IMG/VR virus record: IMGVR_UViG_3300032307_000369
Coordinates: 181,551-245,550 of that record
Length of the DNA: 64,000 nt
Direction: 5' to 3' (one strand)
In this document: one piece after another, positions 19,788 to 52,284 of the stretch
Position numbering within the stretch: the stretch's first letter is position 1
Layout: every line of letters begins with the position of its first letter
Notes under the pieces: generated by a model
Told to the model about the DNA's origin: nothing
What the model saw: only the letters and a program-made list of their open reading frames with translations
The model's database searches: none
Program-made: the position numbers and the translations under genes

Positions 19788-19795
19788 TATAAATA
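19788..19795 (+). promoter_or_regulatory. T4-type late promoter TATAAATA
   Basis: Exact T4 late consensus, 38 nt upstream of the giant fibre ATG. Confidence 0.7.
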
Positions 19796-19833
19796 TAGTA
19801 ACACATTTTTAGAATGGATAAAAAGGAATAAAA

Positions 19834-37196: not shown

Positions 37197-38704
37197 TTAG
37201 TAAGGTAAAAAATATAGTAATTTTTGGCGGAGGTACAAGCGGTTGGCTTACTGCGGCCTACATGGTAAACAATTTAAAAATACCAACTAAGATTACATTA
37301 ATAGAAGATACTTCTCTTGGACCAATTGGTGTTGGAGAAGGTACTCAACCATTGACTGCACAATTTTTACATCAGTGCGGTATTCCACCAAAAATGTGGA
37401 TGAAACCAAGCCAAGCAAGTTTTAAATTTGGTGTTGAATTGGTTGGTTGGAATGACGAGCCATATTTTGTAGATAACGACACTATCAATAATGCAGTTAT
37501 ATCAGAAGACTTTTTTACTAGTGATTACTTTTTAAATAAGGACCCTAAAGAATTTAGAGATTGGCATCCTGCTTATCAATTGGCAAAAGAAAACATTTGT
37601 CCTAAAATTGAAGGAAGTATGGATGTAAATTTTGGTTCAGGAGAGGCTGGATATGGCGCAGTACATTTTAATGCTTACGAAATTATAAAAACAATAAAAG
37701 ATATCATACTTGATAAAATTACATATATTGATACTAAAATTGAAAATATTGAAAAAGACATATATGGAATTACTAAGCTAGTTGATGACAAGAATAACTC
37801 TTACACTGCTGATTTGTTTATAGATTGCAGTGGGTTTAAATCACTGTTACTTGAAAAAACATTAGGATCTCCATTCACTTCATACACAGATTATTTGCCG
37901 TGTGACAAGGCAGTAGTACTTCCAACACAATATACTGATCCTGAAAAAGAATGTTTTCCTTACACTCGTGCAACAACCATGACGTCAGGTTGGAGATTTA
38001 CGATTCCAATTTTTACAAGGGTTGGTAATGGTTACATTTATAGCAGTAAATTTATCAGTAAAGAAGATGCAGAAAAAGAGTTAAGAGAAAGCGTTGGCGA
38101 ATTTGATGCAACTGCAAGACACTTAGATATGAAATGTGGAACACATAAAGAAATTGCTGTTAAAAATGTCTGTGCAGTGGGATTAAGTGCAGGGTTTGTG
38201 GAACCATTGGAAGCAACTGGCATCACTTTTACTACTGCTGTGGTAAGATCAATTACTGACTTATTAAACATGAGTGGAAATGTTTGGAATCAACAAGTAA
38301 AAGACTACATTAACAGAGGATTTCATGAAATGACTACTGAAATTGTAGCATTTGTTTGGGCCCACTACCACTTTGCTACAAGACGAGACACAGATTTTTG
38401 GAAAAATATTGGTGAACAACGCTTAGAAAATTTGCCAGAAGATGTACAGTATGTATTAAGCAATTTTTACCCAATGCCAAGTAAGTATCTTTATTTTAGT
38501 CCTGGCTCAATGTTTAACGCTGTGCAATGGTTTAGTGTTATTCATGCTGGTAAGGGATATGCTAACGTAAAAAATACACTGTCAGAAAAACAAGAACTTT
38601 ACGGAAAATATTTTAAAGAAGTACATGAATCAAGAGTTGGCATGGCAAAGAATACTTTTCCAAATCAATATCAGTATCTAAAGGATTGGTATGCAAAAGT
38701 GTAA
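37193..38704 (+). CDS. Flavin-dependent (tryptophan halogenase family) halogenase
   Basis: GGGTSG FAD motif, GVGEGT, ASFKFG (catalytic Lys position), FIDCSGF, WRFTIP and GFVEPLEATG; start at 37193 via ATGA overlap. Confidence 0.9.
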   Translation: MISKVKNIVIFGGGTSGWLTAAYMVNNLKIPTKITLIEDTSLGPIGVGEGTQPLTAQFLHQCGIPPKMWMKPSQASFKFGVELVGWNDEPYFVDNDTINNAVISEDFFTSDYFLNKDPKEFRDWHPAYQLAKENICPKIEGSMDVNFGSGEAGYGAVHFNAYEIIKTIKDIILDKITYIDTKIENIEKDIYGITKLVDDKNNSYTADLFIDCSGFKSLLLEKTLGSPFTSYTDYLPCDKAVVLPTQYTDPEKECFPYTRATTMTSGWRFTIPIFTRVGNGYIYSSKFISKEDAEKELRESVGEFDATARHLDMKCGTHKEIAVKNVCAVGLSAGFVEPLEATGITFTTAVVRSITDLLNMSGNVWNQQVKDYINRGFHEMTTEIVAFVWAHYHFATRRDTDFWKNIGEQRLENLPEDVQYVLSNFYPMPSKYLYFSPGSMFNAVQWFSVIHAGKGYANVKNTLSEKQELYGKYFKEVHESRVGMAKNTFPNQYQYLKDWYAKV

Positions 38705-39269
38705 ACTTTTTAGAGCTGATCTGTTTTTAGAATCAAATGTTGGTACAGATGAGCAATACAATGATTTACTAAAACAAATTAGATTCGCTCAGAGTATGAA
38801 TAGTAATCCTGCTCCTCACAGTAATGAGAACTGTTGGAGAACTGAAACACAGTATCAAAATATTGGATGGTTACTGCAAGGTTTAAGAAAGTTGTTAGAT
38901 GAATTTATTCTTGAATATAAACATGAATTAGACTATAAGAATTTAGATTACAATAAAATTTCATATTTTTATTGGACAAACATCAATGCACCACATAGTA
39001 AAAATGCTAGACACGCACATGTCAAAAGTCATTTTTCAGCGGTGTACTACTTGCAATCAGAAAATACTGGAGCCCTTAGACTAATTAATCCAGCAAACGG
39101 ACTGTCTGAATGTAACCCAGGCGCTCCGTATATTTCAGACGTTGTTTATCCACCAAAGGATCGAGATTTAGTAATGTGGCCTGCCTGGGTTCCACATGAA
39201 GTTGATCCAAATTATTCAAATAAAGAAAGAATAAACTTAACATTTGATATTACAATAGGTCCAAAATGA
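38691..39269 (+). CDS. Putative 2OG-Fe(II) oxygenase (TIGR02466-like)
   Basis: W.NIN....N..HAH...FSAVYY ... PAWVPHEV.PN....RINLTF. Confidence 0.8.
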   Translation: MQKCKLFRADLFLESNVGTDEQYNDLLKQIRFAQSMNSNPAPHSNENCWRTETQYQNIGWLLQGLRKLLDEFILEYKHELDYKNLDYNKISYFYWTNINAPHSKNARHAHVKSHFSAVYYLQSENTGALRLINPANGLSECNPGAPYISDVVYPPKDRDLVMWPAWVPHEVDPNYSNKERINLTFDITIGPK

Positions 39270-40003
39270 AAGATATAATTTTCTTCTCAACGGTTGAGGG
39301 AGTTTCAGAAGTTTGTCCAATTGTTCCCGCATTAAAATCATTACCAGCCTGGACGAATGTTGCTAGAGAAAAATACATTAAGGAAAAAAATGACAGTAAC
39401 GAAAGAGTTAGTCATCTTTATCAATGCCCAGGAATTTTTGATTTGTATAACTATGGATATATAGTTACAGCTTGGCACGATTTTGTAATTAAAACTGATC
39501 AAAATAAACAAGGGTTTGCTTGGACTATTCCACATTCAGAATTGGCAGATTTGATGAACGGTATAGATATTATTGGTACACATCAACAAAGAATAAGTGA
39601 ACTTATTCCATCTCGACCAACTTCGATCAAACAGATTATTAAACTTAATACACCTTGGCATGTGATTGCACCAAAAGGAATCAAATTTATTGTACTACCT
39701 ATCGCATATCCTGATTCATTTGAATTTGATAGTCATATTGGTATTTTGGATCCTTCTGTCAGTTCTGAAATTAATGTCCAATTAAACTGGAATGTTAAAG
39801 ATGGCGAAACATTAATCAAAGCAGGAACGCCTTTAGCACACCTAATACCAATTAGCGAAGATAAATTTAATCTAATTTGTAGAGATGCAACTGACAATGA
39901 CAAGCGTTGGTTGCGAAAAAGAAATTTCTTTAACAATTTCACTTTTAAACTCAAAAGAAATGTGATTAAAGAATTTTATTATAAACATTTTTATGGAAAA
40001 TAA
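39266..40003 (+). CDS. Hypothetical protein, possible dUTPase-like beta fold
   Basis: CPGIFD...GYI, KLNTPW, GILD and IKAGTPLAHLIP; canonical dUTPase catalytic motifs are not evident. Confidence 0.45.
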   Translation: MKDIIFFSTVEGVSEVCPIVPALKSLPAWTNVAREKYIKEKNDSNERVSHLYQCPGIFDLYNYGYIVTAWHDFVIKTDQNKQGFAWTIPHSELADLMNGIDIIGTHQQRISELIPSRPTSIKQIIKLNTPWHVIAPKGIKFIVLPIAYPDSFEFDSHIGILDPSVSSEINVQLNWNVKDGETLIKAGTPLAHLIPISEDKFNLICRDATDNDKRWLRKRNFFNNFTFKLKRNVIKEFYYKHFYGK

Positions 40004-40005
40004 TT

Positions 40006-40404
40006 ATGCTACACGAAATCAATGACGGAGAATTCGCAACATATATTGTTGTTGAGAGGAAAGTTAAAGACGAATATACTGCAAGAAAAGTACAAAAAGA
40101 TAGACGTAAATTGCAAATATGGTTAGATGCATTATTAAGTGATCGCCATGTTATTATCTTCTATAAAGACGGTATTGAAGAAAAAATGTTTGTGGGTAGT
40201 AAAAAAGAAATGTTTGGTGAACTACCAACAACTCCTATGAATATTGACATTGTTAATAACAAAGTAAAATTACAAAGCTATTACTGCACTTGTTTTGAAG
40301 TTCCCAATAGAACTCCTGTTGCTGTACATGTTGATTCTGTGACTAAATTTATTGTTAAGCAAGAAGGATTATCAGAACTCAGTTCAAGGATTAGATTTAT
40401 ATGA
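40006..40404 (+). CDS. Hypothetical protein (weak resemblance to phage WYL/Sm-like proteins)
   Basis: IIFYKDG..KM ... HVDSV pattern only; the ORF is coupled to its neighbours. Confidence 0.4.
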   Translation: MLHEINDGEFATYIVVERKVKDEYTARKVQKDRRKLQIWLDALLSDRHVIIFYKDGIEEKMFVGSKKEMFGELPTTPMNIDIVNNKVKLQSYYCTCFEVPNRTPVAVHVDSVTKFIVKQEGLSELSSRIRFI

Positions 40405-40985
40405 TTGAAAACGATTTTATTGGGGTATACGACCAAGCGTTGACCAAGGAAGAGTGTGATGAAATCATACGCTACTTTGAAGAGATGAAAAAATTAAACT
40501 TAGTATTTGACCGCCAAAGTTTAAAAGACGGACATGCCCACGAAAAACAAGATGAAACTTGTTTTCCTATGGAACTAGATGAGTTCTATGTTGACAAAAC
40601 TCATCCAACTCTTAAATTATTTTTTGATAAATTTTGGCCATGCTACGAAGAATATGTAAAAAAATACAGTGTGTTAGCAACATCGGTCAAACACGGATCA
40701 CTTGGTATTAGAGTTCAAAAAACCCCAATTGGTGGCGGGTACCATCCTTGGCATTACGAAAATGATGGAAGATTGTCATCATCACGTGTCATAGCATTTA
40801 TGCTATACCTTAACACTGTTACTATTGGTGGTGAGACAGAATTTTTATATCAGCACAAACGAGTCAGTCCAACGCAAGGTAGAGTAGTAATTTGGCCCGC
40901 AGGATTTACGCATACTCATAGAGGAAACCCTCCATTAAGCGGTGAAAAATATATTGTCACTGGTTGGTTAGAGTGGATGGCTTAA
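40401..40985 (+). CDS. 2OG-Fe(II) oxygenase, prolyl-4-hydroxylase-like
   Basis: GGYHPWHYE, R....MLYLN.V..GGETEF, WPAGFTHTHRG.PP and KYIVTGW. Confidence 0.9.
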   Translation: MIENDFIGVYDQALTKEECDEIIRYFEEMKKLNLVFDRQSLKDGHAHEKQDETCFPMELDEFYVDKTHPTLKLFFDKFWPCYEEYVKKYSVLATSVKHGSLGIRVQKTPIGGGYHPWHYENDGRLSSSRVIAFMLYLNTVTIGGETEFLYQHKRVSPTQGRVVIWPAGFTHTHRGNPPLSGEKYIVTGWLEWMA

Positions 40986-42856
40986 TTGACAATCATTATC
41001 ATGCCACGCATTGTAGTATGGTATTGACAATTATAGTATAATTCATCAGGAGCATCCATAGGCACAACAAATGTGATAGTGCCGTTATCTGTTCCGTTAT
41101 TACCTACACCATAATATGCATCAACAGATCCTAATGTTAGCGTAGTTTTGATCCAAAATGGATGTCCCACAGCATTAATGTTGAACACATATCGCTGACC
41201 TCTAGTTAAGGTAAACATTGGATTAATACCTGATACACCTCCACTAAAGACATAATTTCCTGATCCGTTGTTTGTAACATTAAATGCAACTGGCGCAGGA
41301 TTTGTGTAGCCCACTTCTGTGGTTACTTCATACACAACGCTTCTATTAAATGGCTGACGTAAAAATCTATTAGGAGCAGATTGCAAACTTTGTACGTCTG
41401 TGTATCCTCCGCCAGTATCACTTAATCTACCAGTTCTGGCAATGGTCTGTACCCAAGTTCTAACTTTTGCAGGAGTCCAATTTTTTCTACTTTGTAACAT
41501 ACATGCAACAACGCCTGCAACTTGTGGACCTGCCATACTAGTGCCGCTAGATTTGACAGATTTAAAGTTACTATCTGTTGGGTAATCAACTGACCCTGAA
41601 TCAAATAAGGAACCAACAGCTGCCGCACTGATAATATTTTCTCCAGGAGCAAATACGTCTACTCTTGGGCCACAGCAACTGAAAAAACTTTTACCTTCTG
41701 GATTAGCTGATTTTACAGAACCAACACTTATTACGCCTGAAGTTGAACTAGGAGTGGAACCTCTATGATAATATATTGTTCCGTTAACTGTACTGGTATA
41801 GCTGTTATTATAATCAGTTCCTGTAGGTATATCTATTTTGTGAGCATCGTTTCCAGCAGAGCCTACTAGTATGACCCCTGCATCTATACAATCTGCAATA
41901 TCAGCGTCTACAGAAGCAACTCTAACAGGGTGAATATAAACAAAGTTTGGGCTTACTCCAGTTCTATTGTATAATGTTTGAATCATACCATAAGCACTGA
42001 CCATACTGGATCCAGTCCATGGAGTACCACGATATGATCCGCCATTTATATTAGTATACGAATTAAAATAACCCCAACTCATATTGACCACTGTAGGTCT
42101 TCTTGCACCATCAAGAGCATTTACTGGCTTACTTAGATGCCAAGCTCGTATCATGTTGAAGCTAGCACTAACACCAAATGCATCAGTATCAAATATTTTG
42201 ATAGCATATATATTGGCTTCTTTAGCCCAACCATATAATCTTCCTGCAACAGTTCCAGCACAATGTGTTCCATGACCTTCTTGGTCAGTATAATGACTTG
42301 AACCTTGTGTATAAGTTCCAGTTAATCCGCTAATTCCAGGCCAATTTACCTGTTGAAATCTAGAGGCTGTGCCTTCTAAATTAAGCCATTCTGGATGAGT
42401 AGGATCAATACCACTGTCTTGGATTACTACATCAACACCATTTCCACTTAAAGAATATGCATGTTGAAAATTCAATGTTGTTGTAGTGTAAGGATTTGTT
42501 GCGGCGACACAAGCAGGAAACGCCCAATTATAATGTGAGGAGTCCACAGTTATTGATTTGTCGTAAACCCTAGAGTCTTCTAATATATGAGGTTTTAAAA
42601 AGATATTATTTTCTTGCTTTGTTCCATATCTAACATCAATAATTCTTGGATCGCCTTTTAATGTTTCTGCTTCTAACCTAGTTAATACAAAATCAACATT
42701 ACGCAAGCTGTCTATTTTTTCATTATATAATTCTACAGGTCTATTGGGCATGAATTCGTTATGATTTTTGCCACTGACCATGTCCTCAATAAATGCGTCA
42801 ACGTCTACACCTTTATGTAGAGTGACAACTGCTTTGTTTGTATCTTCTGTACTCAT
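40982..42856 (-). CDS. Subtilisin-like (S8) serine protease with C-terminal cupredoxin-like domain
   Basis: Catalytic triad motifs QDSG, HGTHCAGT and SGTSMAGP; oxyanion SAGN; N-terminal propeptide-like region; C-terminal GHPF...YYNCQYHTTMRG. Confidence 0.9.
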   Translation of the reverse strand: MSTEDTNKAVVTLHKGVDVDAFIEDMVSGKNHNEFMPNRPVELYNEKIDSLRNVDFVLTRLEAETLKGDPRIIDVRYGTKQENNIFLKPHILEDSRVYDKSITVDSSHYNWAFPACVAATNPYTTTTLNFQHAYSLSGNGVDVVIQDSGIDPTHPEWLNLEGTASRFQQVNWPGISGLTGTYTQGSSHYTDQEGHGTHCAGTVAGRLYGWAKEANIYAIKIFDTDAFGVSASFNMIRAWHLSKPVNALDGARRPTVVNMSWGYFNSYTNINGGSYRGTPWTGSSMVSAYGMIQTLYNRTGVSPNFVYIHPVRVASVDADIADCIDAGVILVGSAGNDAHKIDIPTGTDYNNSYTSTVNGTIYYHRGSTPSSTSGVISVGSVKSANPEGKSFFSCCGPRVDVFAPGENIISAAAVGSLFDSGSVDYPTDSNFKSVKSSGTSMAGPQVAGVVACMLQSRKNWTPAKVRTWVQTIARTGRLSDTGGGYTDVQSLQSAPNRFLRQPFNRSVVYEVTTEVGYTNPAPVAFNVTNNGSGNYVFSGGVSGINPMFTLTRGQRYVFNINAVGHPFWIKTTLTLGSVDAYYGVGNNGTDNGTITFVVPMDAPDELYYNCQYHTTMRGMIMIVN

Positions 42857-42858
42857 TT

Positions 42859-43956
42859 TTAAATTCCTGTTGTATCCGCGTTGTAGAAAAAGTATCCAGT
42901 ACCATCACTTGTTGTGGCAATTCCTGGACCACTAAATGAAAATGTTATGAAGGCAGCTCCTACACCATTTCCGTATAATACTCTAACTGGATAGTATGTA
43001 CCAGCTGTCAATTGTATATTCCCACTTGTGACTGTACCAGTATTAAATGTGGCAAACACATTGGCATTGCCAGTAGTATAACCACTAACGGCATTGTTAC
43101 CAATCCAAAAATAACTGCCATCATCAGATGCTAGTCTAAAATTATAAATTCCAGTTGTTGGTGCTAGGAAGTAACCTACCCATTGGTAGCTGATGTTATC
43201 ACCAATTGACGGATAATTAACTGCGTTAGTTGCACCTTCTGCCGTAGGGGCGGTCATGTAATTCACGTTTTCGTTATGATAACCCAGTTGATATGATTGA
43301 TATAATCCTGCAATTGGATATATGGTTCCTCGTATTTGCATCCAATCAATTCTAAAATCGTCAACGGCTGTGGCTCCAAAATCAAATCTAATACCAGTAA
43401 TGGTATTATTGGTCCAGTCAGTGCCTCCAGCTGTTAAATTTCTATTATCAATGATCATGTATTGATAGTCAACCCCGTTCCATGTTGGTTGAGTGTAAAC
43501 GTTTCTAAATGAATTTGACTCACCATGACCACCAGTTGTGTAGTAGAATGTACCGTCCCATCCAGTGCCTCCAGTTCTAAGTAATGAAACTTCAACATAT
43601 GGATATCTACTGCCATCAAAACTCAAACCTGTTCTTCTAAGCTGGGGATCAACTGTTGTGGCATCTAAAGTTGAATATGTTGAACCAGATGCAGTCAAAG
43701 TAGCATTAGTGGTAGTAAAGGATTGATTAGTTGCGCCAAAATCAAAAACAATACCAGGACCAGCAGTTGTAACTCCTACTGGCACAATTGCATTGCTTTT
43801 TCCATAGCCATCAGCAGCCAATCGTATGGCTCCTGCACCAACTCCATATAGAGTTCTAACAGATGCTTGTCCTAAAGATATTTGTGTAGTGCCAGTAAGT
43901 CCTAGCTCTACGTTAATATCACTAAAGTCTATTTGTCCGTTTGCTGGTAATGGCAT
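42859..43956 (-). CDS. Fibre-tip adhesin with PA14/GLEYA-like domain
   Basis: N-terminal MPLP..G.I...DIN.ELG...YGKS cap; C-terminal WVGYFLAPTTG.YNF.LASDDGSY.WI...L.AG.YYPVR. Confidence 0.8.
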   Translation of the reverse strand: MPLPANGQIDFSDINVELGLTGTTQISLGQASVRTLYGVGAGAIRLAADGYGKSNAIVPVGVTTAGPGIVFDFGATNQSFTTTNATLTASGSTYSTLDATTVDPQLRRTGLSFDGSRYPYVEVSLLRTGGTGWDGTFYYTTGGHGESNSFRNVYTQPTWNGVDYQYMIIDNRNLTAGGTDWTNNTITGIRFDFGATAVDDFRIDWMQIRGTIYPIAGLYQSYQLGYHNENVNYMTAPTAEGATNAVNYPSIGDNISYQWVGYFLAPTTGIYNFRLASDDGSYFWIGNNAVSGYTTGNANVFATFNTGTVTSGNIQLTAGTYYPVRVLYGNGVGAAFITFSFSGPGIATTSDGTGYFFYNADTTGI

Positions 43957-43957
43957 G

Positions 43958-46900
43958 TTAACCTAACTTCTTTTTAATTTCGTCAACTTGATCTGCTAGC
44001 TCATTAATTGCTTGAATAATCAAACCAGCCATTTTTTCATACTTGACCGCTTTATGTCCGTCTGGACGTGTGGCAACTACCTCTGGTAGTACTACTTCAA
44101 CATCTTGTGCAATCACACCAGTGTCATGTTTGCGCACAAAATAATCATCTTCGCCTCCACGACGTTCAACTTCTTCGTCAGTCCAATCAAACATAACACC
44201 AGTAATTTGTCTTAGTTTTCCCAATGCATTTTCAATTGGTTGAATATTTTCTTTTAGATTTCTGTCTGAAGAAAAGTATGCAGTGATTTCGTTTGTAGCA
44301 CGGATTTCACCAGTAGTAGAACTAGCCGCTGTGCCTACTCCAAGTGAACTATATTGTGGATAGGCAGAACCACTTAACGATGCAGTTGCACTTTCTGATA
44401 AACGCAATCTTACTCCATTGCAGAAATTAAATGTACCATCGTCGCCATTACGTACACACAACAATATCCATGTATGAGGTACTTCTAATGCCGATGTATA
44501 ACTAGCAACTCTAAAGTTTGCTGCCGTACTAGTAAAAGTACTTCCTGTTGGAAGAATATAATACAATGCTTCCCATGCGGCTAGTGGAACTCCTGCCGCA
44601 GTGGCTGTTTTATTTGCCGCTCCACCAACACCAGTTACAGTGCCACTGGTAGGACAGGTAATATCAAAATAACCAGCAGTGCTGAATGTTGCGCCAAAAC
44701 CGTTGGAAATAACAATAAATCTAGTAGCCCATAATACGCTTCCAGTAGAATTGACAGTGATTGCTCCTCCACCACTAACATTAAAGCCTGCTTTGATGCT
44801 TGCTGAATATGTGGCTTGCACAATGCCATTGTATTGAGTTGCAGTTGTAGCAGTTCCCGATAACGTTCCAACAGTCAGCGTGTTTGTATTTGGATTATAT
44901 GTAAATTCTGCCGCACTGTCTTGTAATAGACCATAGTTGCCAGTAGTTGATACAGTTGTATTAGCAAATGGAACTTTGAAAGCACTGTTAGTATTTGATG
45001 CTGTTAATGCAACGTTTGTTGCGTTGGTTGCAGTTGTGGCTGTAGAAGAAGTGACTCCAGTTAAGTTAGCACCATTTCCATAAAAAGCGTTGGCATATAT
45101 GTTACCAGTCACGCCCATACCACCAGTAACACGCAATGTGCCTGTGCTAGTACTTGTTGCCGCACTATTTTGCGTAAACGAAATTGTACCAGACGCAGTT
45201 AATGCGTTACCAAAATTTACTGCACCGCCTACACCTAACCCACCAGTGACTGTTAATGCACCAGTATTTGTACTAGAACTTGCAGTATTATTTGTAAAAT
45301 TAGTAATTCCTGAAACGTTACCACCAGCAAAAGTTTGCGCAATTACACCAGTTAAGTTTGCACCACTACCGTAAAACCCAGTAGCGTACACATCACCAGC
45401 AACTCCTAAGCCGCCGTCTACAATTAATGCTCCAGTACTTGTTGAACTGCTTGCATCAGTGTTTGTTATTTCAATAGCGCCAGCATGTGTTAGTTTACCA
45501 GTACTTGCCCATTGTGCTCTTATGTTTCCTTGTCCATCAGCAATAATAATATTATTGTCGGATGTGGCAATACTTGTGCCGTCATACATACCTAGAATCA
45601 AGTTGTTACTACCAGTAGTAATTGCACTACCTGAGCCACTTCCAACTGTGGTATTCTGAATACCAGTCACATTTAATAAACTATTGTAACCTATACTTGT
45701 GTTGTGATCACCAGTCGCACCAACTGATTGTGAAAATGTACCAACCGCAACGTTAGTTGACCCTTCATTAGCTTTAAGAACATCAGTACCAATAGCAACG
45801 TTTGAACCACCACCTGTTTTAGCACCCATGGCATTATAGCCAATAGACACGTTATTGTTAGTAGTAGTAAGCTGACCTTGGTTACTATAACCAATTGCAA
45901 TATTATTTTGTCCACCAATGTTTGAACCTAATGGAGCATTTACTCCTGATCCACCACCAATGGCCACGTTGGTATCATAGTTTTGACCGCCAGCACCAAA
46001 AGCAATACCGCCAGATTTAAATGTTCCGCCAACGTTCAAGTTACCTTGAACACCCATACCACCAACAACACGTATGGCACCAGTGGTTGTACTAGTACTA
46101 GGAGTCACGTTGTTAACAACCAATGTTCCAGTAATTGTACCACCATTATAACTACCGCTAGCACTGGTCAATACTGGACTGCCAGCCACATAAATTGTGC
46201 CGCCAAAATATCCATCGCCACCTACACCAATACCACCGCCAACAATTAAGGCACCAGTTGTCGTACTAGTACTGGCTGTTACCGCTTGAATTTGAATAGC
46301 GTTTGGAACTGCACCACCCGCAAATTGACTACTAGCCGCATCAACGTATGCTTTGTTAACAGCATCTGTACTTTCAGTTGGACTGGCTACGTTAACAATT
46401 TTACTGCCACTAACGTTAACCTCGCCAGGAGCATCAATAATAAAATCACTACCGCTGGTAAATTTAAGTGCGCCGGTGGTGTCATCAAATAGTGTTTTAA
46501 CTTTTAACTTACCACTAACTATTAGATCATTGCCTACAGTGATGTCATTATAAACGGCTAGGTTATTACCAACTGTTGCATTAGACACTGTAGAAAACAA
46601 TCCAGTAACTTGTGCATTTGTAGCAGTTAATTTGTTAGTTGCTGGGTCCCATGTTAAATCAGATGACGTGTCATCAACTACTGTTCCACTAGCAGTATAA
46701 TAGGCTAATCTATTAACAACACCAGAACTTACTGTTCCACTAGCACTTAAATCTAAACTACCAATTTCTGTGTCAACATAAGTTTTAACTGCTTTTTCGG
46801 TTGGTACTGCCGCATCACTATTACCTGCTAGTGTTCCGTCAATACTAAATTCACTAACTGTCGCACCTTGTGCAAATCCTAAACTGGTAATTGTAATACT

Positions 46901-47311
46901 GGCATTTAAACTGCCAGTAACTGTTAGGTTTTGTGCTGTAAGTGTTCCTGTTGCATCATTCCAAGTTAATGCGGCACTAGTTCCTGATGTAATACCTTGA
47001 GCATTATAGTAAGCAACACGTCCAGGACTTCCTGTACCTAATGGCAAGTTAGTCAGTTGACTACCATCACCAACAAAACTTTGCGCGGTGATTGTTCCGC
47101 TAGCATTTACGGTTCCTGTGTTTATTCCAGGAGTAGTGACCGACCCTGCAGATAAAGGACCAGTAATAGTAGCACTGGTAGAAGTAATTGATGAAAAAGT
47201 AGGACTGTTATTTGGTCTTAAATCCCAAGTGGTGCCATTCCATTCCCAGGTTGTTGTACCAGAAGTATATGTTTGATTTAGTGTTGGACTTAGTGGAAAA
47301 TTAACTGGCAT
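43958..47311 (-). CDS. Tail/neck fibre with S74 intramolecular chaperone
   Basis: S.STTTGAL.V.GG.GV repeats, N.A.G repeats and DAVNKAYVD; C-terminal SSDRNLKENI...GVIAQDV...V.YEK. Confidence 0.85.
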   Translation of the reverse strand: MPVNFPLSPTLNQTYTSGTTTWEWNGTTWDLRPNNSPTFSSITSTSATITGPLSAGSVTTPGINTGTVNASGTITAQSFVGDGSQLTNLPLGTGSPGRVAYYNAQGITSGTSAALTWNDATGTLTAQNLTVTGSLNASITITSLGFAQGATVSEFSIDGTLAGNSDAAVPTEKAVKTYVDTEIGSLDLSASGTVSSGVVNRLAYYTASGTVVDDTSSDLTWDPATNKLTATNAQVTGLFSTVSNATVGNNLAVYNDITVGNDLIVSGKLKVKTLFDDTTGALKFTSGSDFIIDAPGEVNVSGSKIVNVASPTESTDAVNKAYVDAASSQFAGGAVPNAIQIQAVTASTSTTTGALIVGGGIGVGGDGYFGGTIYVAGSPVLTSASGSYNGGTITGTLVVNNVTPSTSTTTGAIRVVGGMGVQGNLNVGGTFKSGGIAFGAGGQNYDTNVAIGGGSGVNAPLGSNIGGQNNIAIGYSNQGQLTTTNNNVSIGYNAMGAKTGGGSNVAIGTDVLKANEGSTNVAVGTFSQSVGATGDHNTSIGYNSLLNVTGIQNTTVGSGSGSAITTGSNNLILGMYDGTSIATSDNNIIIADGQGNIRAQWASTGKLTHAGAIEITNTDASSSTSTGALIVDGGLGVAGDVYATGFYGSGANLTGVIAQTFAGGNVSGITNFTNNTASSSTNTGALTVTGGLGVGGAVNFGNALTASGTISFTQNSAATSTSTGTLRVTGGMGVTGNIYANAFYGNGANLTGVTSSTATTATNATNVALTASNTNSAFKVPFANTTVSTTGNYGLLQDSAAEFTYNPNTNTLTVGTLSGTATTATQYNGIVQATYSASIKAGFNVSGGGAITVNSTGSVLWATRFIVISNGFGATFSTAGYFDITCPTSGTVTGVGGAANKTATAAGVPLAAWEALYYILPTGSTFTSTAANFRVASYTSALEVPHTWILLCVRNGDDGTFNFCNGVRLRLSESATASLSGSAYPQYSSLGVGTAASSTTGEIRATNEITAYFSSDRNLKENIQPIENALGKLRQITGVMFDWTDEEVERRGGEDDYFVRKHDTGVIAQDVEVVLPEVVATRPDGHKAVKYEKMAGLIIQAINELADQVDEIKKKLG

Positions 47312-47312
47312 C

Positions 47313-47582
47313 TTATTCTCCTAAATCCGCAACATTTACCACATGCACTCTATTTTCTAAACAGCAGTTATATCCGCCGTTAATTGAATGTTGTGACTCG
47401 TCCCATAACATTTGAAAGAAATCTTCTCTTTCAAATATTCTAGTCAATTGATCCATTTTAATTGCTGTATTGGTTACAGTATTAAACAAGGTTAAATCGT
47501 ATAAGGAATTAATAGTGCCATCAGCAGACTGTCGTGTGCCGTTCTCAGTTATTGTATATTTCCATGTTCCTAATATTTGCAT
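47313..47582 (-). CDS. Hypothetical small protein in the fibre operon
   Basis: 89 aa; fills the gap exactly, with 1-nt spacing to both neighbours. Confidence 0.6.
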   Translation of the reverse strand: MQILGTWKYTITENGTRQSADGTINSLYDLTLFNTVTNTAIKMDQLTRIFEREDFFQMLWDESQHSINGGYNCCLENRVHVVNVADLGE

Positions 47583-47583
47583 T

Positions 47584-50343
47584 TTAATATCCTACCACGA
47601 AAGAGTTATTACCAGCACCACCAATTCCCATTATTGAATAATGTTTTGTTGTTTGTGGTAAAATTGTAAATGTTTGGCTAGTTGTTGGAGTCATTGTTGC
47701 ATTAGTTCCGCCCTGTAAAGTTAGCGTGGTATTTGAACCTGACACACTTGCTGTTACATACAGTTTGGTTTCTACACCAGGGATAACATTCGTTAATGTT
47801 ATAGTTGCTGATGTACTAGATAGATTAAAATGGAACGCCCTAGCTGTTCTACAATCAATAGTAGTAGTACCACTAGTGTCAATTTCGTTAGCAGGCTCAA
47901 TATAAATGTTTCCAACCATTGCTGGGTGCAACGTACAAATATACTGATAACGTCCTACAGTGTCTCTAGGAATTTGCCAATATAAAGTACCACTTATTTT
48001 TGCTTGAGCTGAAGCACCTGTTGATACAGTGCCATCTCTTGTAATATGCACTAGACCTAAATTGTAATTTGAACCTGCTTGATCAAGAATTGCAAATGGA
48101 TGTGTCCCTTGCATTGTGTTCAAATTAAATGCAATAGTCTGACCAGCTTTAAAATATAAAGTTGGATTATCAGTTGTACCTGTAAAATTAGTAAATGTGT
48201 AGGATAATAAACTATTGTTTACTACATCTAATGATGTACTCGCTGACAATACAATTCTATCCATGGTGAATGTTGGATAATTTTTCCAACCAGTACCGTC
48301 ATAGTATAGTACTTGACCCAAACTTAAATTATTACCTACACCGCCAATTGTTACGTCGCTTAGTTCGTCTAAAGTGGTTGCACCCGTTGTGCCAGTCAAC
48401 GTTATAGTATCAGTAGTTGCATTTGTAGTAATAGTAATACCGCCTGCACCAACTAAGGTCAATGTATCAGTGGTTCCATCAGCTACTACACTAGTCTGTC
48501 CAGCAACTGCGATTGTTTCAAAACTATTACTTGCGGCACCACCTGCACCAGCATTGTCAGTTCCTGGTACCCATTGTGCTAGCGCACCGTTGTATTTTAA
48601 TACTTGTCCATCAGTTGGCGTCACTGATATTTGTACATCAGACAAATCATCTAATGTTGTAGGTACTGTAGGTATTGTTGGACCAGTAAAGGTAATAGTG
48701 TCAGTGGTTGCATTTGTGGTGATAGTGATACCACCTGCACCAACAAATGTTAAATTATCTGCTGGTATGTCAGCAGTGACTGTGGGTTGTGCTTGTACAA
48801 TAATGTTAGCAAACGTATTTTGTTGTGTAATAGTTTGCGTATTATTAATGGTTATAGTATCAGTGGCAGCATCTGTTATTAGAGAAATGTTGGTTCCTGC
48901 AACTAATGTCAATGTATCTGCACTAGAATCTGCAATTACGTTAGGCTGACCACTTACTGCAATAGTACTAAATGAAGTAGCAACTCCTGAGCCAGACAAA
49001 CTTGCACTAATACTGATTGTATTTGCATCAACTCTAGTTAGACTAACGTTAGCACCTTCTTCAAACAAAACGTTTTGGGTTGTATTGTCACTACCAGCTA
49101 GCCTTACGTTAACACCGCCAGCGGCTGGTTGTGTATTAAAAGTATATGTTGTTTGAGCAGGCACGGTCGCCGCAATAGTGATAGTGTCAGCAGTTGAATT
49201 TGAAGTTAATGATATGTTGCTACCAGCAACTAATGTCAAAGTATCTGTTGGACTATCTGCAACAACGCTTGCTTGTCCTGCAATTGATATTGTTCTAAAA
49301 CTATCGCTAGCTGAACTTCCGCTTAAATCAGGAGCATTAACCCATTGTGTCCCGTCATATTTTAAAACTTCACCATTTGTTGGTCCAGACACTGCGACAT
49401 CTGACAAACTAATTAATCTTGGATTCACAAACTGTATATTAGAACCCATATTGCGATGGTTGTAGCACCAGTAGTATAATGTTGTTGGAAAATTATTTCC
49501 AACAGTTAATTCCACAGTTCTAGTAGTAGCTCCATTAAAAGCAGTGCCATTGTACACTTGACTAGTTACGACTACACCGTCTAATTTGTAGACCACATTG
49601 GTCACAAAGGCTGTACCACCATCACGTTCGCCGTTTAATTGATCTGCGCTAAAATTTAAATTGTGTGGGTTTGGAGTTGTGCCATTAGCATTGGGAAAAT
49701 ATACGTTTGTGTCATCGCTTTGATCAAACACATAGGTATAGCCTCGTTGTAAAATCAGTGGTGACGGCTTGTACTCGCCATTAATTCTATACTTGTTGCC
49801 AATATCAGGAGCTTGAGGAGGTACTATGGTAACAACAAAGGTTACTTTTGGTGTTAAGGTAGTATCAACGGCACTACTGCCTTGTAAATCAGCACTGTTA
49901 GTCCAAAAAGCACCATTCCACTTTAATACTTGTCCAACTGACGGACTGCCTACCACGCTAACATCAGTAAGCTGTGTTAGTGCTGTTGCTCCTCCACCGC
50001 CACCTGCGCCACCCCCTGCTTGCCCAAACTGTGGCATTGCAGGTTGTACCCATTGATTGCTGTCACCGTCATCTACATAGACATACAAAACGCCAGTATT
50101 AGTATTAAACCACAAACTGCCGCTACGACTGTTTGATGGTGGAACTTGTGCTACTGCTACCCCAAGACCGCTTTTAGCGTTAGTCAAATCTGCACGTAAA
50201 AGTGGAATTCCGCCCTTAATTAAGCCGTCATAAAGCACCAATGTTTTTTGATCTGCATCGTAGTACAGATCCCCATTGTTGAATCTACTGTCTAAAAAAT
50301 CGCTGTCGTTTGGGACTAGTCTAATTGAACGTAGCGGCGTCAT
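47584..50343 (-). CDS. Repetitive fibre protein with two cupredoxin-like domains
   Basis: Four F.TI.V.GQ..V.AD...D.LT.V repeats and four L.DV......G.VL...G..W repeats; YYWCYNHRNMG and YQYICTLHPAMVG. Confidence 0.75.
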   Translation of the reverse strand: MTPLRSIRLVPNDSDFLDSRFNNGDLYYDADQKTLVLYDGLIKGGIPLLRADLTNAKSGLGVAVAQVPPSNSRSGSLWFNTNTGVLYVYVDDGDSNQWVQPAMPQFGQAGGGAGGGGGATALTQLTDVSVVGSPSVGQVLKWNGAFWTNSADLQGSSAVDTTLTPKVTFVVTIVPPQAPDIGNKYRINGEYKPSPLILQRGYTYVFDQSDDTNVYFPNANGTTPNPHNLNFSADQLNGERDGGTAFVTNVVYKLDGVVVTSQVYNGTAFNGATTRTVELTVGNNFPTTLYYWCYNHRNMGSNIQFVNPRLISLSDVAVSGPTNGEVLKYDGTQWVNAPDLSGSSASDSFRTISIAGQASVVADSPTDTLTLVAGSNISLTSNSTADTITIAATVPAQTTYTFNTQPAAGGVNVRLAGSDNTTQNVLFEEGANVSLTRVDANTISISASLSGSGVATSFSTIAVSGQPNVIADSSADTLTLVAGTNISLITDAATDTITINNTQTITQQNTFANIIVQAQPTVTADIPADNLTFVGAGGITITTNATTDTITFTGPTIPTVPTTLDDLSDVQISVTPTDGQVLKYNGALAQWVPGTDNAGAGGAASNSFETIAVAGQTSVVADGTTDTLTLVGAGGITITTNATTDTITLTGTTGATTLDELSDVTIGGVGNNLSLGQVLYYDGTGWKNYPTFTMDRIVLSASTSLDVVNNSLLSYTFTNFTGTTDNPTLYFKAGQTIAFNLNTMQGTHPFAILDQAGSNYNLGLVHITRDGTVSTGASAQAKISGTLYWQIPRDTVGRYQYICTLHPAMVGNIYIEPANEIDTSGTTTIDCRTARAFHFNLSSTSATITLTNVIPGVETKLYVTASVSGSNTTLTLQGGTNATMTPTTSQTFTILPQTTKHYSIMGIGGAGNNSFVVGY

Positions 50344-50401: not shown

Positions 50402-50836
50402 TCAAATGATGTTGATTAAGTCAAATACTGTTTCTAGTTTGGTTCTAATAATCTTATTAGAAAAGCTACTTTTTAGCCCTTGATGCAATGGTTTGGGCGA
50501 ATGATCCATCTCTGACCAGCACCAACCTTTGTGCTCGCCGTTGAGCTTGGGGATAAATTCGTCTTCTATAATCATTAGATATGTGTGATAAAAGAACTTG
50601 TCGTCCTTACTCACAAATAGCTCTAAGGGAATTGTCTTTTTTACATCAGGCATTACCCCAATTTCTTCAACAATTTCTCTCTTCAAAGCTTCAAAATTAT
50701 TGGCGTCTGTATCTTCTTGTTTCCCGCCCACAATGCCCCAAGTACCGCTAGTCCTGCCGCCATTGCGAAGCAAGAATAAAAATCTCTTGGTTGATTTGGC
50801 ATAGAAAAGTGCTCCACTACAGACTATATCGTTCAT
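50402..50836 (-). CDS. Nudix hydrolase
   Basis: Nudix box GGKQE....EALKREIVEEIG; start at 50836 overlaps the gp15 stop (ATGA). Confidence 0.85.
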   Translation of the reverse strand: MNDIVCSGALFYAKSTKRFLFLLRNGGRTSGTWGIVGGKQEDTDANNFEALKREIVEEIGVMPDVKKTIPLELFVSKDDKFFYHTYLMIIEDEFIPKLNGEHKGWCWSEMDHSPKPLHQGLKSSFSNKIIRTKLETVFDLINII

Positions 50837-52284
50837 AAAATAATTTGCCAACTTCCGTTATCAAAGGTTCCTTCCATACTCTTGGTCCATGTTTCTCCGT
50901 CCCATTTGTATTGAATACCTGTATAAGCATTAGTTATGAACGTTGGGCCATTTTGCGCACCACTATTGAAAATAACGTGCCAAGTTGTGCCATCCCATTG
51001 AATTACATCATTAGCATTGGCTCTTAAAAATGTAGTTCCATTTGCATTTCTAAAATATGGAACACTGTCTGCAAAATCTACAATACTTGCAGGATTAATT
51101 TCTTCTAAGATTAAAAATCTCATGTCTACTGTTTTAGATGCTGGTAGTGGACGAGTAGGATCTACGATCGCATCCACTGTGCCTCTTGCGGCTGTTACTG
51201 CTCCAGCACCTGCAATCAATGTATTAGTTGGAAGACTTTGATTATCAAAGGTTAGATGCATTATTGTTTCGTCAGCAGAATCCAAACTCAATGTAGCAGT
51301 GGCAATTTTTCCATCTGCTTTGGTCAATTGTAACTTACTGTAGCCAGCAACAAATTTTCCTGGATAGCGTTCTAAAATTTCTCTCCAATTAATATTTTGT
51401 CCTAGTTTAGAAATTTGTGTATCAAATGTGTTAGTAACACCTTCAACGTTACCAAGCAGTTTGGCAATATATTGTGGACTACCACTAGAAGAATTATTAG
51501 TAATCATTACTCCATAGCCGTACAGCGTGATCACTTGTCTACTGATCATACTACCTGCTAATAGGTCGTTGGTAATATTTCCTTCTTCATCAAATACTCT
51601 AGCAATGATGCTTGTAATAACGCCTTGACGTTTGACTTTTGCAGGCGGGCTCAACCAAATAGGAGCCATAAATTTCAAACTGGCAACTTCTAAATCTTGG
51701 TCGCCTGTTGGAATAGTTTGGTTAGTATAATTAATTTCCATCAACTCTAGTGTGGTCAAACTAGTCCAATCTAGATAGTTGCTAGTAGTTTGTAATTCAA
51801 TTGCAGGATTAAACAACACTACTATCTGTTCTAAAATTTGTAATTTTTGATCAATGTTAGTTGTCCATATGTCTGCTTTTAAACTCAACTGATATGGATT
51901 AGGCATTAAACGTTCTACGGTTACGTCTGCACCACGCTTTGCCGCATAGTCTTCAATGAATTGTCCATAAGTGGGACTGTTAATATTTTCATCAGTATAT
52001 CCGTACTCACGTTCAATAACGTGTACTTTGCTCACATACGTAGGGTCCTGCATTCTTGTACGACTTAATTCTAAATTTTCAATGTAAGCACTAATAAAAG
52101 GTGCCTGCATTAAAAAGTTTTCACTGTTTTGTCTAAGAATTGATGCAGTTTGTTTGTTTAAGGTACCAAAACGTACAGGAACTTGTACTAGATTACCTTC
52201 ACCGTCTTGATAATGAAATCCACTCAATGCTCTTATAAATTGAGTAAGATATCTTCTTATTTGTCCATCGTAAAAGAAATCCAT
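50833..52284 (-). CDS. Tail sheath stabilizer / tail terminator, T4 gp15-like, C-terminally extended
   Basis: FFYDGQIRRY..QF, VPVRFG, P.PY.L and Q..QILEQI..LFNP. Confidence 0.8.
   Translation of the reverse strand: MDFFYDGQIRRYLTQFIRALSGFHYQDGEGNLVQVPVRFGTLNKQTASILRQNSENFLMQAPFISAYIENLELSRTRMQDPTYVSKVHVIEREYGYTDENINSPTYGQFIEDYAAKRGADVTVERLMPNPYQLSLKADIWTTNIDQKLQILEQIVVLFNPAIELQTTSNYLDWTSLTTLELMEINYTNQTIPTGDQDLEVASLKFMAPIWLSPPAKVKRQGVITSIIARVFDEEGNITNDLLAGSMISRQVITLYGYGVMITNNSSSGSPQYIAKLLGNVEGVTNTFDTQISKLGQNINWREILERYPGKFVAGYSKLQLTKADGKIATATLSLDSADETIMHLTFDNQSLPTNTLIAGAGAVTAARGTVDAIVDPTRPLPASKTVDMRFLILEEINPASIVDFADSVPYFRNANGTTFLRANANDVIQWDGTTWHVIFNSGAQNGPTFITNAYTGIQYKWDGETWTKSMEGTFDNGSWQIIL

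What the first reader, a model, noticed from the sequence alone, without database searches (positions are those of the whole stretch)
40982..49850. Three type-1 copper (amicyanin-like) motifs on fibre-operon proteins
Seen: an upstream His plus C-x2-H-x2-M occurs three times: GHPF...YNCQYHTTMRG (protease C-terminus, about 40982-41290), THPF...YICTLHPAMVG (about 47890-48230) and PHNL...YWCYNHRNMG (about 49420-49850). Known: His...Cys-x2-His-x2-Met is the blue-copper ligand loop of amicyanin (CTPHPFM). All four ligands are kept in three divergent copies, which implies selection for metal binding. Inference: copper-loaded domains are displayed on the virion, for example to engage host copper or redox surface proteins or to sense redox state.
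Basis: partly seen in the sequence, partly recalled or inferred. Interest (0 to 1): 0.75.

Follow-up and report, generated by a model that had tools for sequence, protein, structure and literature searches.

The report
Blue-copper domains on phage tail fibres
Three proteins parts in the tail-fibre operon of a freshwater giant phage are genuine blue-copper (cupredoxin) domains with a complete copper site, members of a huge, almost unstudied family that decorates the tails of aquatic phages, so these virions probably carry bound copper whose purpose is still unknown.

Summary
C-x2-H-x2-M occurs three times in coding frames (0.018 expected), each with an upstream His, at the places given. The three stretches are homologous domains of 105-150 aa: the C-terminus of an intact subtilisin-like protease and two domains of a 919-aa fibre-like protein. 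AlphaFold models (pLDDT 92-94) are eight-stranded cupredoxins (Z 11.1, rmsd 2.0 A to the cupredoxin domain of a copper nitrite reductase), with the ligands at the canonical positions. A family profile finds only blue-copper proteins in the PDB. In 608 related domains the His/Cys/His triad is kept in 568 and is otherwise lost almost always together; a fourth copy in this same phage has lost all four ligands. So the site is under selection as a unit. The family is vast (12,016 clusters), forms the C-terminus of gp9 of marine cyanomyoviruses (found in virions by proteomics) and also ends exported CHRD lipoproteins of Flavobacteriaceae. I found no paper on it; pipelines call some members "plastocyanin". 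Copper loading and function are untested. My best guess is a metal-locked, stable display or adhesion module; redox or mimicry roles remain open.

The parts
40982..42856 (-). Gene for a 624-aa subtilisin-like serine protease with a C-terminal cupredoxin domain; last gene of the fibre operon
   Evidence: Pfam Peptidase_S8 3.1e-32, residues 138-474; Asp147, His197, Ser440 motifs present; same fusion in cyanophages
40985..41329 (-). D1, cupredoxin domain (residues 510-624), ligands His565, Cys610, His613, Met616
   Evidence: AF2 pLDDT 92.4, 8 strands; Foldseek PDB top 50 all cupredoxin-fold copper proteins; VIA Z 11.1, rmsd 2.0 A over 91 residues to 2dv6_A; profile 2.8e-41
47584..50343 (-). Gene for a 919-aa fibre-like protein: N-terminal fibre motif, D2, repeat region, D3, variable C-terminal domain
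   Evidence: PHROG tail-fibre families at residues 57-102 and phrog_677 three times; orthologue profile; repeats
49384..49848 (-). D2, cupredoxin domain with two insertions (residues 166-320), ligands His227, Cys293, His296, Met299
   Evidence: AF2 pLDDT 93.8; Foldseek top rusticyanin, nitrite reductase, AcoP, plastocyanin; VIA Z 7.9, all top 50 cupredoxin-fold; invariant H, C, H, M columns
47863..48276 (-). D3, cupredoxin domain (residues 690-827), ligands His748, Cys803, His806, Met809
   Evidence: phmmer to PDB: copper nitrite reductase cupredoxin domain 0.0054, amicyanins; Pfam Copper-bind 0.045, below cut-off; profile 5.8e-32. Not modelled
47313..47582 (-). 89-aa ORF between the 919-aa protein and the fibre gene, conserved in the relative
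   Evidence: no family match
43958..47311 (-). 1117-aa tail fibre with C-terminal intramolecular chaperone
   Evidence: Pfam Peptidase_S74 2.8e-15; many PHROG fibre families
42859..43956 (-). 365-aa protein with PA14/GLEYA carbohydrate-binding domain
   Evidence: Pfam GLEYA 2.3e-23, PA14 9.2e-17
50402..52284 (-). Upstream genes of the same strand block: gp15-like tail sheath stabiliser and NUDIX hydrolase
   Evidence: PHROG 11196, 227; Pfam T4-gp15_tss and NUDIX in the syntenic relative; NUDIX

Best explanation
Layer 1, what it is (about 0.85): the three motifs are the metal sites of three true cupredoxin domains, each from a different old branch of one very large subfamily (consensus GHPF ... 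YYxCxxHxxMxGxI). The subfamily is a mobile module on baseplate, fibre and accessory proteins of aquatic myoviruses and also ends exported lipoproteins of Flavobacteriaceae. Layer 2 (about 0.8): the His/Cys/His/Met set is kept by selection as one unit, so each domain binds one metal ion, most likely copper in a type-1 site. Layer 3, how it works (inferred, about 0.4-0.5): on the virion the domains are metal-locked, very stable globular knobs strung along the fibre and hung on the protease. They hold or present the attached working parts (variable fibre tip, protease) at the cell surface, perhaps with weak adhesion, as Ig-like domains do on other phages. The metal serves mainly to stabilise an exposed domain, not to catalyse. 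Shown: motif, homology, fold, ligand placement, conservation, coupled loss, operon context. Inferred: virion location in this phage, copper as the metal, the stabilising role.
For: Fold: AF2 pLDDT 92.4 and 93.8; PDB matches all cupredoxin-fold copper proteins, Z 11.1 and 7.9. Ligands sit where cupredoxins have them: His1 just before a strand, Cys at the end of the seventh strand, His2 and Met in the loop before the last strand. Profile of 86 family members against the PDB: 8e-06 to nitrite reductase cupredoxin domain, then pseudoazurin, plastocyanin, amicyanin, azurin, auracyanin; pseudoazurin's GHN and C..H....M align with the family's ligands. Conservation: H 99.4, C 99.7, H 99.7, M 98.7% in 316 domains. 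In 608 domains 568 keep the triad, 2 lost one ligand, 38 lost two or three; joint Cys+His2 loss 35 against 2.25 expected. A fourth copy in the same genome lost all four yet keeps the family signature, so the fold does not need the ligands. Module behaviour: fused to S8 protease, collagen, LamG, S74, FGE-sulfatase, Hint, CHRD, gp9/10_N; up to 9 copies per protein; 26 of 30 proteins with a degenerate copy also keep an intact one. Virion: cyanophage gp9 (T4-GC 398) detected by virion proteomics (PMC3037559 Table S8) and carries the domain with all ligands. Not the specificity tip.
Against: No copper measurement exists. The phage proteins have no signal peptide and fold in the cytoplasm, where free copper is scarce and where recombinant cupredoxins often take up zinc (own knowledge). 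No copper chaperone gene in the 245 kb held, which is about 70% of the genome. A purely stabilising role does not easily explain why 93% of copies keep an electron-transfer type site when ligand-free copies fold. Fusions to an ArsC-family domain and to FGE-sulfatase-type domains hint at redox partners. Model coordinates could not be read, so ligand distances were not measured. D3 was not modelled.
Confidence: 0.5

Rival explanations
1. Redox-active centre: the virion-borne type-1 copper exchanges electrons with something at the host surface (a redox protein, superoxide, Cu or Fe species) and this is used as a signal or trigger for adsorption, or protects the tail from oxidants.
For: The ligand set and fold are those of dedicated electron carriers. 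Near-universal retention of the full site. Fusions with an ArsC-family thioredoxin-fold domain (L031) and FGE-sulfatase-type domains (P0049, P0064). The short C-x2-H-x2-M loop is the one in which the exposed His ligand protonates near neutral pH in reduced amicyanin (own knowledge).
Against: No partner is known on any host surface. Type-1 sites change shape very little on redox change, so they make poor mechanical triggers (own knowledge). The residue after His1 is Pro in 94% of the family, unlike known carriers. About 7% of copies, one of them in this phage, do without the site.
Confidence: 0.2
2. Mimicry or bait: the phage domain imitates an exported host cupredoxin domain, or offers bound copper, to dock on the host's partner or uptake receptor, a copper version of the 'Ferrojan horse' idea for iron on tail fibres.
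For: D1 is 47% identical (1e-28) to the C-terminal domain of a chromosomal CHRD lipoprotein of cultured Flavobacterium, closer than to D2 or D3 of its own genome; AFDB best match is such a CHRD protein, TM 0.89. The host of this phage is unknown and its G+C (about 39%) would fit Bacteroidota.
Against: The tree does not place D1 inside the Flavobacteriaceae clade, which is a separate group (92/83), and gives no direction of transfer. The domain is on phages of very different hosts, cyanobacteria included. Domains are not hypervariable among orthologues. No receptor is known.
Confidence: 0.12
3. Site empty or filled with another metal: the domain is loaded with zinc, or nothing, during cytoplasmic assembly, and the ligands persist for folding or by recent descent from cellular copper proteins.
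For: Cytoplasmic folding, no signal peptide, no phage copper chaperone found.
Against: The three copies belong to old, separate branches (19-35% identity) and still keep all ligands. Losses are all-or-none, which argues for a working site. The ligand-free fourth copy shows the fold does not need them. Type-1 sites bind copper at femtomolar affinity, so loading after lysis is thermodynamically possible (own knowledge).
Confidence: 0.12
4. Chance recurrence of a short motif in unrelated sequence.
For: The motif has only three fixed residues.
Against: 0.018 expected, 3 seen; the stretches are homologous and fold alike.
Confidence: 0.01

Closest known systems
Amicyanin (Paracoccus, Methylobacterium)
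   Same: Cupredoxin fold, His...Cys-x2-His-x2-Met, the shortest natural type-1 loop; weak direct sequence hits.
   Different: Amicyanin is a free periplasmic carrier between methylamine dehydrogenase and cytochrome c-551i with a signal peptide and His-Asn after ligand 1. Here: domains inside virion proteins, no such gene context, His-Pro in D1 and D3.
Extra cupredoxin domains fused to copper nitrite reductases and multicopper oxidases (2dv6, 6tfd, 6hbe, 9cck)
   Same: Best structural match (Z 11.1, rmsd 2.0 A, 26% identity) and best sequence matches (8e-06); loop 'YICTLHPWMKG' nearly identical to D3's; a cupredoxin used as a fused module.
   Different: There the domain feeds electrons to a catalytic copper centre in the same enzyme. 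No catalytic copper domain is fused here; the partners are a serine protease and fibre repeats.
Rusticyanin and AcoP of Acidithiobacillus
   Same: Top Foldseek matches for both models; larger cupredoxins with extra loops, like D2.
   Different: Acid-stable periplasmic carriers of iron oxidation; 11-21% identity; different loop lengths.
Plastocyanin PetE, the cyanophage auxiliary metabolic gene
   Same: Same superfamily; JGI's pipeline names many family members 'plastocyanin'.
   Different: PetE is a free 100-aa protein with C-x2-H-x4-M, acting inside the infected cell (PMC3037559). None is present in the 245 kb of this phage.
[quoted passage not shown]
   Same: Same domain family with all ligands; structural proteins, gp9 detected in virions.
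   Different: Those carry the T4 gp9/10 N-terminal domain or collagen repeats. The window's proteins do not, and the phage is a freshwater jumbo myovirus nearer to PA5oct-type phages by its portal. T4 gp9 itself has no such domain.
CHRD-cupredoxin lipoproteins of Flavobacteriaceae
   Same: 47% identity to D1, same ligands, C-terminal position.
   Different: Exported lipoprotein with three CHRD domains in ordinary chromosomal context; uncharacterised.
Ig-like decoration domains of phage structural proteins; iron-binding HxH sites of T4 gp37 ('Ferrojan horse')
   Same: Beta-sandwich modules added to virion proteins; metal on a tail fibre (own knowledge; PMC11705849 listed).
   Different: No metal in Ig-like domains; the gp37 sites are inter-chain His clusters binding iron, not a cupredoxin site.

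Membership tests
Cupredoxin superfamily, type-1 (blue) copper site | Greek-key beta-sandwich of seven or eight strands, about 100-150 residues | tested here: met
   D1: 8 strands, pLDDT 92.4, Z 11.1 to 2dv6_A. D2: pLDDT 93.8, Z 7.9, top 50 all cupredoxin-fold. D3 by homology only.
Cupredoxin superfamily, type-1 (blue) copper site | Four ligands: one His upstream, then Cys, His, Met in the loop between the last two strands | tested here: met
   Present in D1, D2, D3; invariant columns; positions relative to strands canonical; aligned with ligands of pseudoazurin and nitrite reductase domains.
Cupredoxin superfamily, type-1 (blue) copper site | Detectable sequence homology to known members | tested here: met
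   Family profile against the PDB: only copper proteins at the top, 8e-06 to 0.1, up to 80 of 123 positions.
Cupredoxin superfamily, type-1 (blue) copper site | Ligands conserved across homologues | tested here: met
   98.7-99.7% in 316 domains; 568 of 608 keep the triad; loss is coupled.
Cupredoxin superfamily, type-1 (blue) copper site | Binds one copper: band near 600 nm, small parallel hyperfine splitting in EPR | not testable with these tools
   Needs protein and spectroscopy.
Cupredoxin superfamily, type-1 (blue) copper site | Ligand atoms within bonding distance in the structure | not testable with these tools
Cupredoxin superfamily, type-1 (blue) copper site | Residue after His1 (Asn, or Ser in rusticyanin) whose backbone NH bonds to the Cys sulfur (own knowledge) | tested here: not met
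   Pro in D1 and D3 and in 94% of the family; Asn in D2. A difference in the second shell, not a defining feature of the fold.
Pfam PF00127 Copper-bind | Score above the gathering cut-off of 21.2 bits | tested here: not met
   D3 14.6 bits, D1 and D2 no hit; 3 of 86 family members at E below 0.01; own genome 13 bits. The family is a branch that the Pfam model does not cover.
Amicyanin proper | C-x2-H-x2-M loop | tested here: met
Amicyanin proper | Free exported protein encoded with methylamine dehydrogenase genes | tested here: not met
   Domains lie inside 624-aa and 919-aa proteins without signal peptide in a fibre operon.
Plastocyanin PetE | Free protein of about 100 aa, C-x2-H-x4-M loop | tested here: not met
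   Loop is x2/x2; no free copy in the genome.
T4 gp9 baseplate wedge tail fibre connector (the PHROG 677 label) | T4 gp9/10 N-terminal domain PF07880 | tested here: not met
   No Pfam hit in either window protein. PHROG 677 matches only through its C-terminal cupredoxin part, profile positions 179-410 and 259-409.
Virion structural protein | Detected in purified particles | not testable with these tools
   Only indirect: gp9 of cyanophages detected; operon with fibre, gp13- and gp15-like genes.

The most novel reading that the evidence does not exclude
Blue-copper centres are a working part of the adsorption apparatus of a large share of aquatic myoviruses, nearly all marine cyanomyoviruses included. 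The copper, or the cupredoxin surface around it, is needed for infection, by docking on the partner of a host exported cupredoxin or by reading the redox or copper state at the cell surface. Phage particles would then also be an uncounted pool of tightly bound copper in natural waters.
Probability: 0.15. Interest if true: 0.85.

Novelty: new variant of a known kind. Interest (0 to 1): 0.6.

Why it matters
Type-1 copper sites are known as electron carriers inside cells. Finding them, with the site under strong selection, on tail proteins of phages would add a metal cofactor to the phage adsorption machinery. The family is large: 12,016 clusters at 50% identity, 337 GenBank phage records, gp9 of most marine cyanomyoviruses. 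It is testable at once in culturable cyanophages by ICP-MS and EPR of virions. It also bears on trace-metal budgets, since phages are very abundant. There is a practical point: pipelines label these fibre proteins 'plastocyanin', which can inflate counts of photosynthesis or copper-enzyme auxiliary genes in viromes.

Tried and rejected
Megablast of the operon against GenBank phages: no match. Single-sequence Pfam: only a sub-threshold Copper-bind hit. Three-sequence alignment misplaced the His of D2; corrected with 56 sequences. Cyanophage host considered and set aside: no psbA or hli, portal nearest jumbo phages, freshwater runs. Phage-encoded copper chaperones (HMA, SCO1, PCuAC): none. Sigma-70 promoter and terminator scan: at background; T4 late promoter motif TATAAATA: 2 sites, fewer than chance. 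Tree of 128 domains: shows three old branches and one Flavobacteriaceae clade, but no root and no direction of transfer. Nine literature searches found only petE or nirK auxiliary genes and nothing on virion cupredoxins; the library lacks most subscription journals, so absence is not proof.
Full report
OBSERVATION. The region holds a block of minus-strand genes: a gp15-like tail protein (50833-52284), a NUDIX gene, a 919-aa protein (47584-50343), an 89-aa ORF, a 1117-aa fibre with an S74 chaperone end (43958-47311), a PA14/GLEYA protein (42859-43956) and a 624-aa subtilisin-like protease (40982-42856). C-x2-H-x2-M occurs at protease residue 610 and at residues 293 and 803 of the 919-aa protein; the only other three matches in six frames lie in frames broken by stops. 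From the composition of the 20,268 coded residues 0.018 matches are expected. Ligand codons are listed. Two of the three cysteines of the 919-aa protein are these ligands.

THE THREE STRETCHES ARE HOMOLOGOUS DOMAINS. Pairwise BLASTP gives 4e-07 (D1-D3) and 5e-05 (D1-D2). A profile built from 86 family members scores them 2.8e-41, 2.2e-27 and 5.8e-32 and finds nothing else in the window. With enough sequences the upstream His of D2 ('PHNL') falls in the same column as 'GHPF' of D1 and D3; H, C, H and M are invariant in that alignment of 56. D2 differs by two insertions.

FOLD. AlphaFold2 with these alignments gives confident models: D1 pLDDT 92.4, pTM 0.83, eight strands; D2 pLDDT 93.8, pTM 0.86. 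For D1 all 50 best Foldseek matches in the PDB are cupredoxin-fold copper proteins: AcoP, rusticyanin, nitrite reductases, laccases, pseudoazurin, plastocyanin. VIA-align gives Z 11.1, rmsd 2.0 A over 91 residues and 26% identity to the N-terminal cupredoxin domain of Hyphomicrobium nitrite reductase. For D2 the list is again cupredoxins, with Z up to 7.9. That value is middling on its own but uniform in kind. In both models His1 lies just before a strand, Cys at the end of the seventh strand, and His2 and Met in the loop before the last strand, the canonical arrangement. I could not read coordinates, so ligand distances are unmeasured, and D3 was not modelled.

SEQUENCE LINK TO KNOWN COPPER PROTEINS. 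D3 alone hits the cupredoxin domain of a copper nitrite reductase (0.0054) and amicyanins weakly. The family profile finds only copper proteins at the top of the PDB list (8e-06 downwards), and the family's ligands align with those of pseudoazurin and the fused cupredoxin domains. Pfam's Copper-bind model stays below its cut-off and recognises 3 of 86 members. This is therefore a branch that current models do not cover.

SELECTION ON THE SITE. Homologues of both proteins gave 343 domains, of which 333 have the exact motif. In 316 distinct domains the four ligand columns are 98.7-99.7% conserved and are among the most conserved columns. Adding the best 150 of a search of 1.84 billion representatives gives 608 domains. 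Of these, 568 keep His/Cys/His, 2 have lost one ligand, 14 two and 24 all three. Joint loss of Cys and His2 was seen 35 times against 2.25 expected if losses were independent. Axial variants (Phe, Asp, Gln for Met) occur, as in known cupredoxins. A fourth copy in the same phage, outside the window in a 4748-aa open frame, has replaced all four ligands yet still scores 2.2e-17. So the fold does not need the ligands, and where they are kept they are kept as a unit. That is the behaviour of a working metal site. The sample is biased towards relatives of the window's proteins.

WHERE THE FAMILY LIVES. There are 12,016 clusters at E up to 0.001, with up to nine copies per protein. In GenBank phages the domain is in 337 records, almost all cyanophages. 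[quoted passage not shown] S-RIM2 gp9 and P-SSM2 PSSM2_028 carry all four ligands. Virion proteomics detected cyanophage gp9, T4-GC 398 (PMC3037559, Table S8). Fusion partners include S8 protease, collagen, LamG, S74, Hint, FGE-sulfatase, CHRD, YHYH and gp9/10_N. The family is not confined to phages. A pattern scan of prokaryote genomes followed by the profile found it at 130-150 bits in cultured Flavobacterium, Gaetbulibacter, Maribacter and Tenacibaculum. There it is the C-terminal domain of a lipoprotein with three CHRD domains in ordinary chromosomal context. That domain is 47% identical to D1 and is the best AlphaFold DB match, TM 0.89. In a tree the Flavobacteriaceae copies form one clade. 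D1, D2 and D3 sit in three separate groups, two of them with full support. They are therefore old paralogues or separate acquisitions, not recent duplicates.

THE PHAGE. The window is the end of a 245,550-base IMG/VR record, about 70% complete. Its portal is nearest to jumbo phages such as PA5oct and Phosso, at about 49%. It lacks psbA, hli and petE. Its DNA is found in freshwater, lake and subsurface metagenomes, and a relative with the same operon lies on a 349,857-base contig. It is a freshwater jumbo myovirus of unknown host.

HOW IT MOST LIKELY WORKS. Shown: three cupredoxin domains with complete, selected type-1 ligand sets in the fibre operon. Inferred: they are exposed on the virion and hold copper. 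Among orthologues of 80-92% identity the cupredoxin domains are as conserved as the rest (82-88%), whereas the last 100 residues of the 919-aa protein fall to 60%. So the domains are not the specificity tip. Their promiscuous fusion, their repetition along fibres and the survival of ligand-free copies fit a general module that presents other parts. I therefore favour a metal-locked, stable knob with at most weak adhesion (about 0.4-0.5). A redox role (0.2), mimicry or copper bait (0.12) and an empty or zinc-filled site (0.12) are not excluded. Against copper loading: the proteins fold in the cytoplasm, have no signal peptide, and no phage copper chaperone was found. One unusual feature is Pro after His1 in 94% of the family, where known cupredoxins have Asn or Ser. 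That should remove one hydrogen bond to the Cys sulfur and shift the potential; this rests on my own knowledge and inference.

COMPARISON AND NOVELTY. The domains are members of the cupredoxin superfamily. They share the loop length of amicyanin but not its biology. They are closest in structure and sequence to cupredoxin domains fused to copper nitrite reductases and oxidases. They belong with the C-terminal domain of cyanophage gp9. Pipelines already tag some members as 'plastocyanin' or 'blue (type 1) copper domain', but nine full-text searches found no study of a copper domain on a virion. I rate it a new variant of a known kind: a known cofactor domain in an undescribed setting, and widespread.

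VERDICT. Interest 0.6.

Noticed in passing
outside the window: G000:C1:165190-165492 (-), locus L004:1450-1860: A fourth copy of the domain in a 4748-aa open frame has all four ligands replaced (Gln for His1; no Cys, His or Met in the loop) but still matches the family profile at 2.2e-17.
   Followed up: partly
window 1-64000; G000 whole record: The phage is a freshwater or subsurface jumbo myovirus: portal nearest PA5oct and Sinorhizobium phage Phosso (about 49%), no psbA, hli or petE, and a syntenic relative on a 349,857-base contig. Yet its fibre accessory genes (cupredoxin modules, S8 protease, Trp halogenase, 2OG-Fe(II) oxygenases) are those typical of marine cyanomyoviruses.
   Followed up: partly
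loci L014, L020, L022, L042, L080, L083, L087 (Flavobacteriaceae genomes): Chromosomal lipoprotein with signal peptide and lipobox, three CHRD domains and a C-terminal cupredoxin domain 47% identical to D1; uncharacterised. In Maribacter a SCO1/SenC copper chaperone gene lies about 3.5 kb away.
   Followed up: partly
locus L031:1696-2640 (-) (Bdellovibrionales MAG): An ArsC-family, glutaredoxin-like domain fused to the same cupredoxin domain, with a second domain-bearing ORF next to it. This is a possible hint at a redox partner; the contig may be viral.
   Followed up: no
window 40982-42856 (-): The subtilisin-like protease has its Asp147, His197, Ser440 motifs intact and so looks active. The same protease-cupredoxin fusion occurs in several Synechococcus phages (S-H38, S-CREM1, S-RSM4, ACG-2014h).
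   Followed up: partly
window 47584-50343 (-), residues 313-695 and 821-919: The 919-aa protein holds repeats of an 'L-x-D-L-S-D-V ... G-Q-V-L-x-Y-x-G' unit and at least three 'D-T-L-T-L-V-A-G ... D-T-I-T-I' units. Its last 100 residues are by far the most variable part among orthologues (60% against 82-88%), the likely specificity tip.
   Followed up: partly
window 29987-31039 (+): A G+C spike (0.51 against about 0.39) coincides with a 350-aa ORF holding a glycine-rich domain (PF12810, 2.4e-13).
   Followed up: partly
window 19788-29979 (+): A 3381-aa ORF is preceded by one of only two TATAAATA (T4 late promoter type) sites in the window. The motif is rarer than chance overall, so late promoters here probably differ from T4's.
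   Followed up: no
window 37154-40985 (+): Trp halogenase, two 2OG-Fe(II) oxygenase genes and small ORFs converge on the protease gene; the two stop codons overlap at 40982-40985. The arrangement is conserved in the 350-kb relative.
   Followed up: no
window 50402-50851 (-): A NUDIX hydrolase gene sits inside the tail gene block between the gp15-like gene and the 919-aa protein, also in the relative.
   Followed up: no
proteins P0044, P0054, P0068, P0122, P0130, P0131, P0137 and others: JGI's pipeline names these fibre-like proteins 'plastocyanin', while UniProt names relatives 'tail fiber' or 'baseplate wedge tail fiber connector'. Automatic labels could create false petE-type auxiliary gene calls in viromes.
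   Followed up: no
BFVD hits A0A481Z6J5, A0A481YVH3, A0A7D3QVK4: Metagenomic giant viruses (Pithovirus-, Marseillevirus-like, Fadolivirus) encode small 'beta-sandwich' or 'blue type 1 copper' proteins that match the D1 model at TM 0.56-0.74.
   Followed up: no
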